DNA of 64,000 bases, taken from NCBI RefSeq assembly GCF_006345805.1, contig NW_021832230.1, positions 124,001 to 188,000 of the forward strand. Direction: 5' to 3'. The stretch is from Octopus sinensis (lineage: Eukaryota). The notes below the pieces were generated by a model. It ran no database searches and was not told where the DNA came from. It was given only the letters and a program-made list of their open reading frames with translations. The translations under genes and the position numbers were made by a program. Positions 19,702 through 35,658 of this stretch are shown here, piece by piece (position 1 is the first letter of the stretch; every line of letters starts with the position of its first letter).

Positions 19702-22700
19702 ATGGGAGACAGCGGAGTATCGGACGAAATTTCACCCCCGTTAATTAACATTAATGATAGAGGAAGAAGTAAAAGAGTTGAAAATTTCACATTTATTATT
19801 TCTAGCCATTCAGAAGTATAACTTCAATTGATGGGCAGAAGGAAATTCTACGAAATTTTAAACAGATTAAAGAAGAAAGAAAAGCAACAGTCATAAAATT
19901 TAATTTTAATGTTGTAGCTTGATGAAAGACATAAATATATATTTAATCAGCTTGCTTTTTGTAGTGGGCTTGATATTAATACAGTTGAAGACAATTTGCT
20001 GACGGACTCAGAGGTTATTCTTAAAAAATAAAAAAAATAGTTTGAAGTATTTAACGACTTTTTTTCGAAAAATGGGTCACAAAAAATTAGTTTTCTTCAC
20101 AATGAATTGACTGAGAAAGGGAAACCTCAGCTAAAAATATTCAGAGATAGCATTGATGTAAAAATATAACAATATATGAAAATTTCTAGACTATAGAGGG
20201 GTTTTGCTACGTTTTTATCAAAGAAAAGAAAGATAAAGAAATAACAAACAATAACATCGCTCAAGAAGTTATTTTTTCTATGTTTGAAGCCAACCCCGAT
20301 AATTTTTTGGAAAGTGTAACGAGACTAATTAGTGACTTGTATATACCAGTAGTACAATGCAATGAAGTATTTTTATTCATGAAGCCTATTTTCAGGAGTG
20401 GAAAAAGAATTCTTCGATGGAAAAAATTGGAAATGAGTTAGTGGAAAATCTGCAAGATTTTGTGAAAAATATATCCTCAATTGGAAAAGAGTCTGTAAAT
20501 AAACAAATTCTTTATTTTGACAAAGTAAACGAGTCATTATCGCAATATACTATTCCAAAACAATATGAAAGTGCAGGTTTTAAATAACAAAACTGATTGA
20601 CTATAGCTTCTAAAAGTGATTTGGTTGAAATGCTGGAAAAGGAAGTTTCAACGTGGATGAAAAATATTGAAGAAACATTAGCAGAAAGTGAACAAATGCG
20701 GCGTGAAGCTGATGATGTCGGACCTACCGCGGAACTAAGCTATTGGAAAGAAAGAATGGCAAAATTTAGCGGGTATGAACAAGTCAAATTATTAAAATAG
20801 ACTCCTTGAACAGATCTCATCGTTTGAATGTACGCGAGCTTTATTAATCTTGAAACTTGCTAAATCAAAATTAATACCATTGTGGCTCAAATTAGTATTT
20901 TTTATAATTTATAACAAATTAGGATAACAAAATAACAATATCGTCAAACGAGGCCAAGAGCAACGTTAAGTTCTTGTATACCTTAGAAAAATATTTTGGA
21001 CCTCTTGGAAAATCGAATCCAGTACATTAAAAAAATTAACTACGACTTAGGTGGAACTGCTAGAAATTGTTCCCGGAGTCATAAATTCTGTGAAAATGAT
21101 TTATTCGGTGTCACAATATTATAATACTCCTGAAAGAATTACTTCTTTGTTCGTAAAAATAACGAATCAAATGATTGCATCTTGTAAAGTTTATATAAGA
21201 AGTAAAAGTTTAAAAATATGGGAACAACCTAAGTACTATCAAACTATTTCAATTATAAAGGGATGAACTGATTACCAAAATCAATGAATGTATCAAACTA
21301 AAAGATTTTTATCAAGGTTATTATCAAAAAACCAAAGAAAGATTAAAGATTGACCCAAGTGAGAAACAATTTGAATTCAGGTTTTAAGTGTTGTCATAGT
21401 TTCAGTGAAAACTATATATTTGGAAAATTTGAAACATTTAGTAAACGTCTCACAATGATTGTGGAGATAATTGAGGCAATCGATGCTTATTCTACTGTCA
21501 ACACTATTAAAGCTGACGGATTTGATCCGATCGCAATTAAATTTAAAACTATAACTGATGCAATCTACAAAAAGTCATACGATATTTTAGATCAGAGGAA
21601 AAATGAAGTAAAGACTGATTATTCTTAATGAAAATAGTTTAACGTGGATTATTCTGAATTTAAAAACAACATTAATCACATTAAGTTACAAATTGAAAAT
21701 TTTTTGAGTGGATGGATTTCTCGCCCACTTTCGGTTAGAATTAAACATATCAATATTGATTATAGGTCGAAAATTCTTTAGCGCTTATAAACAAATTTTC
21801 TTCTTTAAATGAATTAAATCTTGAAAGTCTCTATGCGGACATATTTTCAAATTTTGGAAAAGAATTAGAAGTTGTTAGAAGAATTTATGAAAAAAATTGC
21901 CGAGACCCTCCGGTTTTAAGATTTCATCCTCCAACGGTCAGTCGTATACTGTGGGCAAGGCAGCTGTTTAAAAAAATTGAATCGCCAATGAACGTGTTTA
22001 CTGAAATTCCTAGATTTTTGGAAGTTAATAATAAATTGTATAAAGCATAGAATCCTGAGTATCGCGAAACTATTATTAATTACAACAAAACTGCATCAAC
22101 TTTGCTTGAGTATGAGGTTTCCCAGCATTTAAATAGTCTTTGTAGATTCAAAGCTTTAACAGATGGCATATCAATGTCGCCAAAGTCAAACATAATCTTT
22201 ATTCTACTCTGTTAGTTGTAGATGAAACAAATTACGAATACTCAGTAAACTTTAATTATCGGATTCTTGAATTGCTTCACGAAGGAAGTTATATGGTTGA
22301 TATTGGATTGGAAATTCCTAAAGAAATTGAAACTGTCTGCGCAAGAAAAATTCAAATAAAGAACAAATTATCAAAGTCATTCAGTTAAATAACTATTATA
22401 GACTTCAAGATATGCTCAATGCGTATAATAACGTGACAAGCTCAATTCCACAGCTTTTAATTCCTCCAATGAGACCATTTGTCGAAAAAATTAGATTAGC
22501 GATGAATGATGGCGTGCGTTCTTTAAACTGGCAATCTCTCAACATTGATTCATGTAAATCACCGAATTTACTACGTTTAGATATAAATCAAGTAATGAGC
22601 ATGATTAAGGATTTGCAACAATTGATAAAAGATGCAAAAGATATTCTAATTTATAGAATTGAAAAATCATTTGAAGAAATAGGAATGACTCAGTTATTTG

Positions 22701-34700: not shown

Positions 34701-35658
34701 TATTGTAAGCATTCAACCTAAGGATGCTGGAGGCACTGGGGGAGAAACAAGAGAAAGTGCTGTTTACAGAATGGCTGATGACATGCTTAGTAAATTGCCA
34801 CAAAATTATATTGACTATGAGGTTAGAAAATTGAAATTTAATTTTTTAGATCAGAGATGCATTGCGGAAAATGGGACATTTACAACCTCTAAATATATTT
34901 CTTCGCCAAGAAGTTGACAGAATAAAAAAAGTCATCGGACTAGTATACATCACTCTGAACGACCTCAAACTTGCAATTGATGGAACAATTATAATGAGCG
35001 AAAACCTTCGAGATGCCCTCGATAATCTCTACGATGCACGGGTTCCGGCAATATGGGCAAAAGTAAAATAGTTATTATTTAACGAAATTAAGATTTCTTG
35101 GGAGTCGACTAGTATTGGATTTTGGTTTACAAACCTTTTGGAACGAAATGCACAGATCAATGCATGGCTATTTGGAGGCAGGCCCAAAACATTCTGGATG
35201 ACAGGATTTTTTAATCCTCAAGTGGATTTAATTTTTACTCAAAATAGGGCTTCTTAACTGCAATGAGACAAGAGATTACAAGAGCTCATAAAGGATGGGC
35301 ATTGGACAATGTCTCATTGGCAAACGAAATACTTAAATATTCCAAAGAAGAAATTACCAAATCCCCCGAGGAAGGTGTGTATGTCTACGGTTTATATTTG
35401 GATGGAGCCGAATGGGACAAAAAGAATTCCAGATTAATTGAACCTCAACCTAAAGTTTTAAACACAATGTTACCCGTTGTGCACATATTTGCTACTAATT
35501 CGGAAAGACAATCTGGAAAAACATTATACGAATGTCCTGTTTACAAGAAACCTCGTCGTACTGATTTGAATTATATCTTTGCACTATTACTAAAAACACG
35601 CAAAGAACCAGAACATTGGATTCTTAGAGGCGTTGCAGTGCTATGCGACACGAAATAA
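19702..35658 (+). CDS. DNAH5: Axonemal outer-arm dynein heavy chain, DNAH5/DNAH8 (gamma-type); 81 exons, 4553 aa
   Basis: Manual splicing of 80 introns (2295 nt) leaves an open 13662-nt CDS ending LCDTK*. P-loops [24 protein letters not shown] (DNAH5/8-type) and GVGGSGKQ; [10 protein letters not shown]; N-terminal LDERHKYIF; C-terminal [29 protein letters not shown]5 versus DNAH8 cannot be resolved here. Confidence 0.95.

What the first reader, a model, noticed from the sequence alone, without database searches (positions are those of the whole stretch)
21233..35092. One quarter of 3' splice sites are AAG, more than CAG
Seen: in the dynein parse 20 of 80 acceptors are AAG, 12 CAG and 48 TAG (AAG examples 21233-21260, 23881-23906, 28845-28871, 35063-35092). 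Several skip an upstream YAG (TAG 17 nt into 23636-23667; CAG 22 nt into the intron ending 27663). Established: animal acceptors are overwhelmingly YAG. Inference: the -3 position is nearly unconstrained and the acceptor behaves as the first AG beyond a ~23-25-nt minimum distance.
Basis: partly seen in the sequence, partly recalled or inferred. Interest (0 to 1): 0.7.

Follow-up and report, generated by a model that had tools for sequence, protein, structure and literature searches.

The report
AAG acceptors in dicyemid-type tiny introns
A ciliary dynein gene of what is almost certainly a dicyemid parasite is broken by about 80 introns of only 25-34 bases, a quarter of which end in AAG; the count is real, but it fits the reduced splice signals already published for these animals rather than a new splicing mechanism.

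Summary
All are 25-34 nt long. All 20 AAG sites survive a test that forbids them.

Position rules: the used acceptor is the first AG at or beyond about 23-25 nt from the donor in 77 of 78 introns. AGs between position 23 and the used site are depleted (1 seen, 8.4 expected, P=0.0014).

The -3 position is relaxed, not free. G is absent (P=0.002). Against the AT-rich intron background A is at 0.64x, T at 1.34x and C at 1.75x. In the one AAGTAG tandem the TAG is used.

This matches what the catalytic core alone imposes (Prp8 blocks -3G, tolerates -3A, scans from the branch). No polypyrimidine-tract or U2AF-type preference is visible.

The organism is inferred to be a dicyemid. Ultra-short introns and a 3' logo reduced to "AG" are already published for Dicyema japonicum (PMC13644364), so the novelty is low.

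The parts
19702..35658 (+). DNAH5-type axonemal dynein heavy chain gene: 81 exons (median 157 nt), 80 introns of 23-34 nt, 4555 codons plus stop
   Evidence: 58-59% identity over full length to lophotrochozoan DNAH5. The spliced ORF has no stops and ends ...[11 protein letters not shown] like its orthologues.
21233..21260 (+). AAG-acceptor intron, 28 nt
   Evidence: 7/7 guides; loss 180-185 if forbidden
22789..22814 (+). AAG-acceptor intron, 26 nt; skips a TAG ending at nt 11
   Evidence: loss 49-80
23522..23554 (+). AAG-acceptor intron, 33 nt; skips an AAG ending at nt 14
   Evidence: loss 14-16; among the weakest margins, poorly conserved region
23636..23667 (+). AAG-acceptor intron, 32 nt; skips an in-frame TAG ending at nt 17
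   Evidence: loss 97-127
23881..23906 (+). AAG-acceptor intron, 26 nt
   Evidence: loss 82-91
24581..24607 (+). AAG-acceptor intron, 27 nt
   Evidence: loss 131-138
24849..24879 (+). AAG-acceptor intron, 31 nt
   Evidence: loss 59-61
25007..25033 (+). AAG-acceptor intron, 27 nt
   Evidence: loss 117-119
27169..27199 (+). AAG-acceptor intron, 31 nt
   Evidence: loss 120-129
27633..27663 (+). AAG-acceptor intron, 31 nt; skips a TAG ending at nt 14 and an in-frame CAG ending at nt 22
   Evidence: loss 12-16. The only alternative needs a GC donor and loses the conserved KK.
28845..28871 (+). AAG-acceptor intron, 27 nt
   Evidence: loss 52-53
29293..29322 (+). AAG-acceptor intron, 30 nt
   Evidence: loss 76-97
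29948..29981 (+). AAG-acceptor intron, 34 nt; skips an AAG ending at nt 14
   Evidence: loss 118-123
30331..30358 (+). AAG-acceptor intron, 28 nt; skips an AAG ending at nt 10
   Evidence: loss 22
30548..30578 (+). AAG-acceptor intron, 31 nt
   Evidence: loss 40-50
31523..31550 (+). AAG-acceptor intron, 28 nt
   Evidence: loss 42
32589..32615 (+). AAG-acceptor intron, 27 nt
   Evidence: loss 67-78
34493..34526 (+). AAG-acceptor intron, 34 nt
   Evidence: loss 94-102
34639..34664 (+). AAG-acceptor intron, 26 nt
   Evidence: loss 104-108
35063..35092 (+). AAG-acceptor intron, 30 nt; skips an in-frame TAG ending at nt 9
   Evidence: loss 29-31
26784..26812 (+). The one exception to the first-AG rule: AAGTAG tandem. 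The AAG ending at nt 26 is bypassed for the TAG at nt 29.
   Evidence: loss 65. Using the AAG would leave TAG as an in-frame stop in this phase-0 intron.
19816..19841 (+). Intron 1 with a CAGAAG tandem acceptor: 23 nt if CAG is used, 26 nt if AAG. Both are in frame and unresolved.
   Evidence: The N-terminus is too poorly conserved for homology to decide.
49679..49705 (-). Candidate 27-nt in-frame AAG-acceptor intron in a second gene, the SPTLC1-like gene on the minus strand at about 49867..48315. That gene's other tiny introns end in TAG, CAG, TAG, CAG, TAG and possibly CAG.
   Evidence: Removing it takes out a 9-residue insertion relative to human SPTLC1. It has no stop codon, so it could also be read as coding.

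Best explanation
These are ordinary U2-type GT-AG introns shrunk to near the physical minimum, in an AT-rich genome that is most likely a dicyemid's.

In an intron of 25-34 nt there is no room for a polypyrimidine tract. The branch site must lie a nearly fixed distance from the 5' splice site, roughly nt 17-21. The 3' splice site is then the first AG that the catalytic centre can reach downstream of the branch. In practice this is the first AG at or beyond about 23-25 nt from the donor, some 5-14 nt past the inferred branch.

The only filter left on the -3 base is the one the catalytic core imposes at exon ligation. Prp8's alpha-finger sterically excludes -3G and tolerates -3A. YAG wins over AAG when both are within reach.

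The interior of these introns is 40% A, 44% T and 9% C. A twofold disfavour of A therefore still leaves about a quarter of sites as AAG, more than CAG.

Shown here: the counts, the distance rule, the AG-free zone, the exclusion of G, the depletion of A and the outcome of the AAGTAG tandem. Inferred: the branch position, the role of Prp8 rather than U2AF35, and the identity of the organism.
For: Intron set and counts. Robustness of every AAG call.

Distance rule, 77 of 78. AG-free zone between nt 23 and the acceptor, 1 seen against 8.4 expected, P=0.0014.

-3 against background (G 0/78, P=0.0024; A 0.64x, P=0.006; C 1.75x). AAGTAG tandem resolved to TAG.

No polypyrimidine tract beyond a TT at -6/-5 (29 against 16.3). 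Weak 5'-anchored A17/A19/A20/T21.

Exon-side signals are retained: +1 G in 43/78 (p=6e-13) and exon -2 A in 57/78 (p=5e-11).

Literature. PMC13644364 reports that among 51 animals only myxobolids and Dicyema japonicum have introns under 30 bp. It reports the D. japonicum 5'ss reduced to 'GTa' and the 3'ss to 'AG', with weakly conserved A's that lie further from the AG the longer the intron. PMC6543705 gives a median of 27 bp in Dicyema sp. PMC12707134 reports that Prp8 Q1594 blocks -3G, that AAG reporters splice like wild type, that selection scans from the branch site, and that YAG is preferred over AAG in NAGNAG pairs.
Against: There is no transcript evidence. No same-species protein or transcript was found (look-ups), so every junction rests on homology.

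No branch-site motif stands out. TACTAAC-like sites are no more frequent than in shuffled introns (17 against 18.4). The 5'-anchored A/T signals would not survive correction for multiple testing.

The sample is essentially one gene, 78 introns plus 6-7 from a second. The whole-genome tools were shut. The splicing-factor complement (U2AF35/65, SF1, Prp8, Slu7, Prp18) could therefore not be examined.

The absence of YAG within 9 nt downstream of AAG sites (0/20 against 9/58) is not significant (p=0.10).
Confidence: 0.75

Rival explanations
1. The -3 position is truly unconstrained in this lineage. The spliceosome reads only 'AG' at a set distance, and the -3 counts merely reflect composition.
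For: The published D. japonicum 3'ss logo shows only AG (PMC13644364). Used and skipped AGs do not differ significantly at -3 (p=0.19). AAG is used at 20 of 78 sites.
Against: G is 0/78 where 5.8 are expected (P=0.0024). A is depleted to 0.64x (P=0.006). The overall chi-square is p=5.5e-4. TAG is chosen over the upstream AAG in the only tandem. An information-content logo in an AT-rich genome would hide a twofold bias.
Confidence: 0.12
2. The AAG sites are artefacts of gene modelling. The real junctions use neighbouring YAGs or non-canonical sites, or the gene is a decaying copy.
For: No RNA evidence was available. Two AAG calls have modest margins (12-16 units; 23522-23554 and 27633-27663).
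Against: Seven orthologues give identical junctions at all 20 sites. Every alternative costs at least 12 units, and usually more than 40, or shifts the frame. The spliced ORF of 4555 codons has no stop and is 58-59% identical to orthologues end to end. The DP had no term that favours AAG.
Confidence: 0.05
3. A lineage-specific change in 3' splice-site recognition raises acceptance of -3A beyond what a standard spliceosome would allow. Candidates are loss or divergence of U2AF35 (or its zinc fingers), or of Slu7 or Prp18.
For: The AAG share is several-fold higher than in other animals. No polypyrimidine tract is present. AAG sites show some compensation by T at -4 (p=0.036).
Against: The pattern needs no new factor. 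Composition plus the known order C, T > A >> G reproduces it. In yeast, wild-type Prp8 already splices AAG reporters efficiently (PMC12707134). PMC13644364 found U2AF1/2 orthologues in the myxozoans it examined and reports a similar analysis for the ciliate Stentor. The passages I read say nothing about dicyemid U2AF.
Confidence: 0.08

Closest known systems
Ultra-short spliceosomal introns of dicyemids (Dicyema japonicum, Dicyema sp.): Ogino et al. 2010 as cited in PMC6543705; PMC6736024; PMC13644364
   Same: Median length 27-28 nt. Most introns are under 30 nt. The 5'ss is reduced to GTa and the 3'ss to AG. There are weak A's whose distance from the AG grows with intron length. Intron density is high in conserved genes, and the genome is repeat-rich with reverse-transcriptase elements. 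The window shows all of these.
   Different: The papers give sequence logos, not -3 counts normalised to background. In the passages I read they do not state the first-AG distance rule, the AG-free zone or the exclusion of GAG. The species of this window could not be established.
Ultra-short introns of myxobolid myxozoans (PMC13644364)
   Same: Animal introns of 22-27 bp with reduced splice-site logos and a putative branch A close to the AG.
   Different: Myxozoans are cnidarians. From my own knowledge they lack cilia, so they are an unlikely source of a DNAH5 gene. The best hits here are lophotrochozoan.
Scanning and competition model of 3' splice-site choice: first AG downstream of the branch, CAG ~ UAG > AAG > GAG (Smith et al. 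1993, from memory), and yeast Prp8 alpha-finger work (PMC12707134)
   Same: The first reachable AG is used. G at -3 is excluded and A is tolerated. YAG beats AAG in a NAGNAG tandem.
   Different: In mammals and yeast the branch-to-AG distance is usually 10-40 nt, and YAG makes up about 95% of sites. Here the inferred distance is about 5-14 nt and AAG reaches 26%.
Tiny introns of ciliates such as Paramecium and Stentor (Jaillon et al. 2008, from memory; cited in PMC13644364)
   Same: Introns of 15-30 nt in AT-rich genomes. 3n introns are depleted, and the 3n introns that exist are enriched for in-frame stops. This gene shows 18/78 3n introns, and 16/18 of those carry stops.
   Different: Ciliates are protists with other genetic codes. 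This window uses the standard code and is an animal gene.

Membership tests
U2-type (major) GT-AG spliceosomal introns | GT (rarely GC) at the 5' end and AG at the 3' end | tested here: met
   75 GT and 3 GC donors; 78/78 AG
U2-type (major) GT-AG spliceosomal introns | Removal restores an open reading frame colinear with orthologues | tested here: met
   4555 codons without a stop; 58-59% identity over full length
U2-type (major) GT-AG spliceosomal introns | Branch-site motif complementary to U2 snRNA upstream of the AG | tested here: inconclusive
   TACTAAC-like sites number 17 against 18.4 +/- 3.7 in shuffles. Only weak 5'-anchored A17/A19/A20/T21.
U2-type (major) GT-AG spliceosomal introns | Polypyrimidine tract before the acceptor (typical of animals) | tested here: not met
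   Positions -10..-4 are 39% A and 45% T. The only signal is TT at -6/-5 (29 against 16.3).
U2-type (major) GT-AG spliceosomal introns | Junctions observed in spliced RNA | not testable with these tools
   No same-species transcript or protein in the collections
Dicyemid ultra-short introns | Median length about 27 nt, most under 30 nt | tested here: met
   Median 28, range 25-34, 51/78 under 30 nt
Dicyemid ultra-short introns | Splice-site logos reduced to GTa ... AG | tested here: met
   Intron position 3 is A 38, T 25. No conservation at positions 4-6. At -3, T 46, A 20, C 12. Compare PMC13644364.
Dicyemid ultra-short introns | Source organism is a dicyemid | tested here: inconclusive
   Inferred from an animal axonemal dynein with lophotrochozoan best hits, introns under 30 nt reported only for dicyemids and the unciliated myxobolids (PMC13644364), and the RT, Tc1 and hAT repeats. 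Window GC of about 33% compares with 36.7% published. No direct match to a named record. The genome tools were shut.
U12-type (minor) introns | [AG]TATCCTT donor and TCCTTAAC branch site | tested here: not met
   No such donor. One chance CTTAAC at the wrong end of an intron.
NAGNAG tandem acceptors | Two AGs 3 nt apart, both in frame | tested here: met
   Two cases: AAGTAG at 26807-26812, where TAG is used because AAG would leave a stop, and CAGAAG at 19836-19841, unresolved

The most novel reading that the evidence does not exclude
In dicyemids the 3' splice site may be set by a molecular ruler measured from the 5' splice site: branch at about nt 20, then the first AG at least about 3-5 nt beyond. 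U2AF35 and the polypyrimidine tract would play no part. Only the Prp8 core filter would remain at -3, leaving a minimal animal spliceosome that could show which 3'ss constraints are catalytic and which come from early recognition.
Probability: 0.3. Interest if true: 0.5.

Novelty: already known. Interest (0 to 1): 0.3.

Why it matters
The finding gives a clean, gene-sized quantification of something published so far only as genome-wide logos. When animal introns shrink below 30 nt, acceptor choice becomes positional, and the -3 base keeps only the constraint expected from the catalytic core: no G, mild dislike of A.

This has practical use for annotating dicyemid and similar genomes. Gene finders trained on YAG acceptors and a 30-nt minimum would miss about a quarter of sites. 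ORF-only methods miss in-frame, stop-free 27-nt introns.

It does not reveal a new splicing system.

Tried and rejected
1. ORF-only dynamic programming. The minimal-intron and length-penalised versions both mis-called many junctions, either swallowing coding sequence or inventing 15-20-nt introns. I replaced it with homology-guided alignment.

2. Transcript evidence. Two fragment searches, of 517 aa and 211 aa spanning 6 and 3 AAG junctions, found nothing above 73% identity. Three exact-sequence look-ups of window ORFs found nothing.

3. Whole-genome logo and splicing-factor genes. The genome search was shut.

4. Branch-site motif search. The TACTAAC-type scan was no better than shuffles. The positional k-mer scan gave only weak hits.

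5. De novo intron scan of the rest of the window by flanking open frames. It was swamped by false positives in the transposon-rich, GC-richer regions and was abandoned.

6. Differences between AAG and YAG introns in length (p=0.24) and in +1 G (p=0.79): none found.

7. Literature searches for -3 usage in other AT-rich genomes returned nothing useful. Statements about other species' AAG shares rest on my memory.
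Full report
**What is there.** The + strand from 19702 to 35658 encodes an axonemal dynein heavy chain of the DNAH5 type. A preliminary translation found full-length DNAH5 proteins of molluscs, nemerteans, brachiopods and annelids at 58-59% identity. No same-species protein was found. The code is standard. The gene is cut by about 80 very short introns.

**How I checked the parse.** ORF-only dynamic programming was unreliable. I therefore wrote a protein-to-genome spliced aligner. It scores with BLOSUM62, allows GT or GC donors and AG acceptors, and allows introns of 15-150 nt. 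It carries a flat intron penalty and has no term for intron length or for the -3 base. I ran it against seven orthologues separately.

Seventy-eight introns were called identically by at least six of the seven guides. With two N-terminal introns the model has 80 introns, 81 exons (median 157 nt) and 4555 codons without a stop.

Acceptors among the 78 are TAG 46, AAG 20, CAG 12 and GAG 0. Lengths run 25-34 nt, median 28. That intron ends in a CAGAAG tandem which homology cannot resolve.

When each acceptor is forbidden in a local realignment, all 20 AAG sites cost 12-185 score units with each of three guides.

**Is -3 unconstrained? No.** The intron interior is A .40, C .09, G .07, T .44. Against that background the -3 counts differ (chi-square p=5.5e-4):
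- G is 0 where 5.8 are expected (P=0.0024).
- A is at 0.64x (P=0.006).
- T is at 1.34x.
- C is at 1.75x (P=0.04).

The classical order C, T > A >> G survives, only flattened. AAG outnumbers CAG because C is scarce in these introns, not because A is liked.

Two further observations point the same way:
- The single exception to the first-AG rule is an AAGTAG tandem (26784-26812). The downstream TAG is used there, because using the AAG would leave an in-frame stop.
- AAG sites are preceded by T at -4 more often than YAG sites (13/20 against 21/58, p=0.036).

No AAG site has a YAG within 9 nt downstream, against 9 of 58 YAG sites. That difference is not significant (p=0.10).

**Is the acceptor the first AG beyond a minimum distance? 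Yes.** Thirty introns contain 36 internal AGs. Thirty-five of these would give an intron of 22 nt or less. With a threshold of 23, 24 or 25 nt, the used site is the first AG in 77 of 78 introns.

Shuffling intron interiors gives 8.4 AGs between nt 23 and the acceptor, against 1 observed (P=0.0014). Used and skipped AGs do not differ significantly at -3 (p=0.19).

**Other signals.**
- The donor is essentially GT plus A or T at position 3.
- On the exon side, A at -2 (57/78) and G at +1 (43/78) are the strongest signals.
- There is no polypyrimidine tract, only a TT at -6/-5.
- A TACTAAC-type branch scan does no better than shuffles.
- Anchored at the 5' end there is a weak rise of A at nt 17, 19 and 20, and of T at nt 21. 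Each is only nominally significant.

That last signal matches a published remark: the weak A's of Dicyema introns move away from the AG as introns lengthen (PMC13644364). A branch near nt 20 would put the used AG 5-14 nt downstream. It would also explain why AGs up to nt 22 are invisible to the spliceosome.

**Mechanism proposed.** These look like conventional U2-type introns at minimal size. The branch sits a near-fixed distance from the donor. The first AG the catalytic centre can reach is ligated. At -3 only the catalytic-core filter remains.

Yeast work fits this. Prp8 Q1594 sterically blocks -3G, AAG reporters splice like wild type, selection scans 5' to 3' from the branch, and YAG beats AAG in tandems (PMC12707134). 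The roles of Prp8 and of U2AF here are inference. I could not look at the organism's splicing factors.

**Organism and novelty.** Among 51 animal genomes surveyed, introns under 30 bp were found only in myxobolid myxozoans and Dicyema japonicum (PMC13644364). Dicyema sp. has a median of 27 bp (PMC6543705). D. japonicum has 49% repeats, including LINE reverse transcriptases (PMC6736024).

The window holds an axonemal dynein with lophotrochozoan affinities. It also holds Tc1/mariner, reverse-transcriptase and hAT remnants. A dicyemid is therefore the best inference, but it is not proven.

The same 2026 paper already reports that the D. japonicum 3' splice-site logo is reduced to 'AG' and the 5' logo to 'GTa'. 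The finding is thus a correct, gene-level rediscovery of a published property. What this analysis adds is the normalised -3 bias, the exclusion of GAG and the explicit distance rule.

**Second gene.** An SPTLC1-like gene lies on the minus strand at about 49867-48315. It was identified by matches to serine palmitoyltransferase 1 structures (E=1e-74). It has 6-7 tiny introns. Their acceptors are TAG, CAG, TAG, CAG, TAG and possibly CAG, plus one candidate in-frame 27-nt intron ending in AAG (49705-49679). AAG use is therefore probably not peculiar to the dynein gene, but this sample is small.

**Limits.**
- No RNA evidence was available.
- The sample is one large gene plus a small one.
- AAG shares quoted for other species come from memory.

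Noticed in passing
window 19702-35658 (all introns of the dynein gene): Introns whose length is a multiple of three are under-represented (18/78, p=0.033). Of those, 16 of 18 carry an in-frame stop if retained, against 31/60 of the others (Fisher p=0.005). This is the signature described for ciliate tiny introns under translation-dependent surveillance.
   Followed up: partly
window 26567-26595, 28048-28074, 31321-31354: Three GC-AG introns (3.8%), all starting GCAT and all preceded by an exon ending in AG. Each is strongly supported by homology (loss 28 to 232 if forbidden).
   Followed up: partly
window 19702-35658: Strong excess of phase-0 introns (54/78; p=6e-5 against 47%, which is my recollection of the usual animal share). 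The count of about 80 introns is close to what I recall for human DNAH5, suggesting conserved positions. Not checked against any gene structure.
   Followed up: no
window 49349-49375 (-), 48426-48452 (-), 49679-49705 (-): In the SPTLC1-like gene, two or three 27-nt introns are in frame and free of stops. ORF-based parsing reads them as coding. They show up only as 9-residue insertions relative to human SPTLC1. The 48426-48452 one rests on remembered homologue sequence.
   Followed up: partly
window 17569-18715 (+), 40013-40540 (+), 45747-46352 (+), 55365-57027 (-): Transposon remnants flank the genes: a Tc1/mariner-type transposase split over two frames, two reverse-transcriptase fragments in GC-richer blocks (40-42% GC), and a hAT/BED-finger transposase.
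   Followed up: partly
window 60707-61111 (-): An ORF with a weak RPAP1 N-terminal match (E=1.6e-5, just under the curated cut-off). It is possibly part of another multi-exon gene running to the window end. Not modelled.
   Followed up: no
window 19702-35658, exon sides of all junctions: The exon side carries more signal than the intron side: A at exon -2 in 57/78 and G at exon +1 in 43/78, giving a consensus A[A/G]|GT[A/T] ... [T/A/C]AG|G. Exon-based recognition may partly replace the lost intronic signals.
   Followed up: partly
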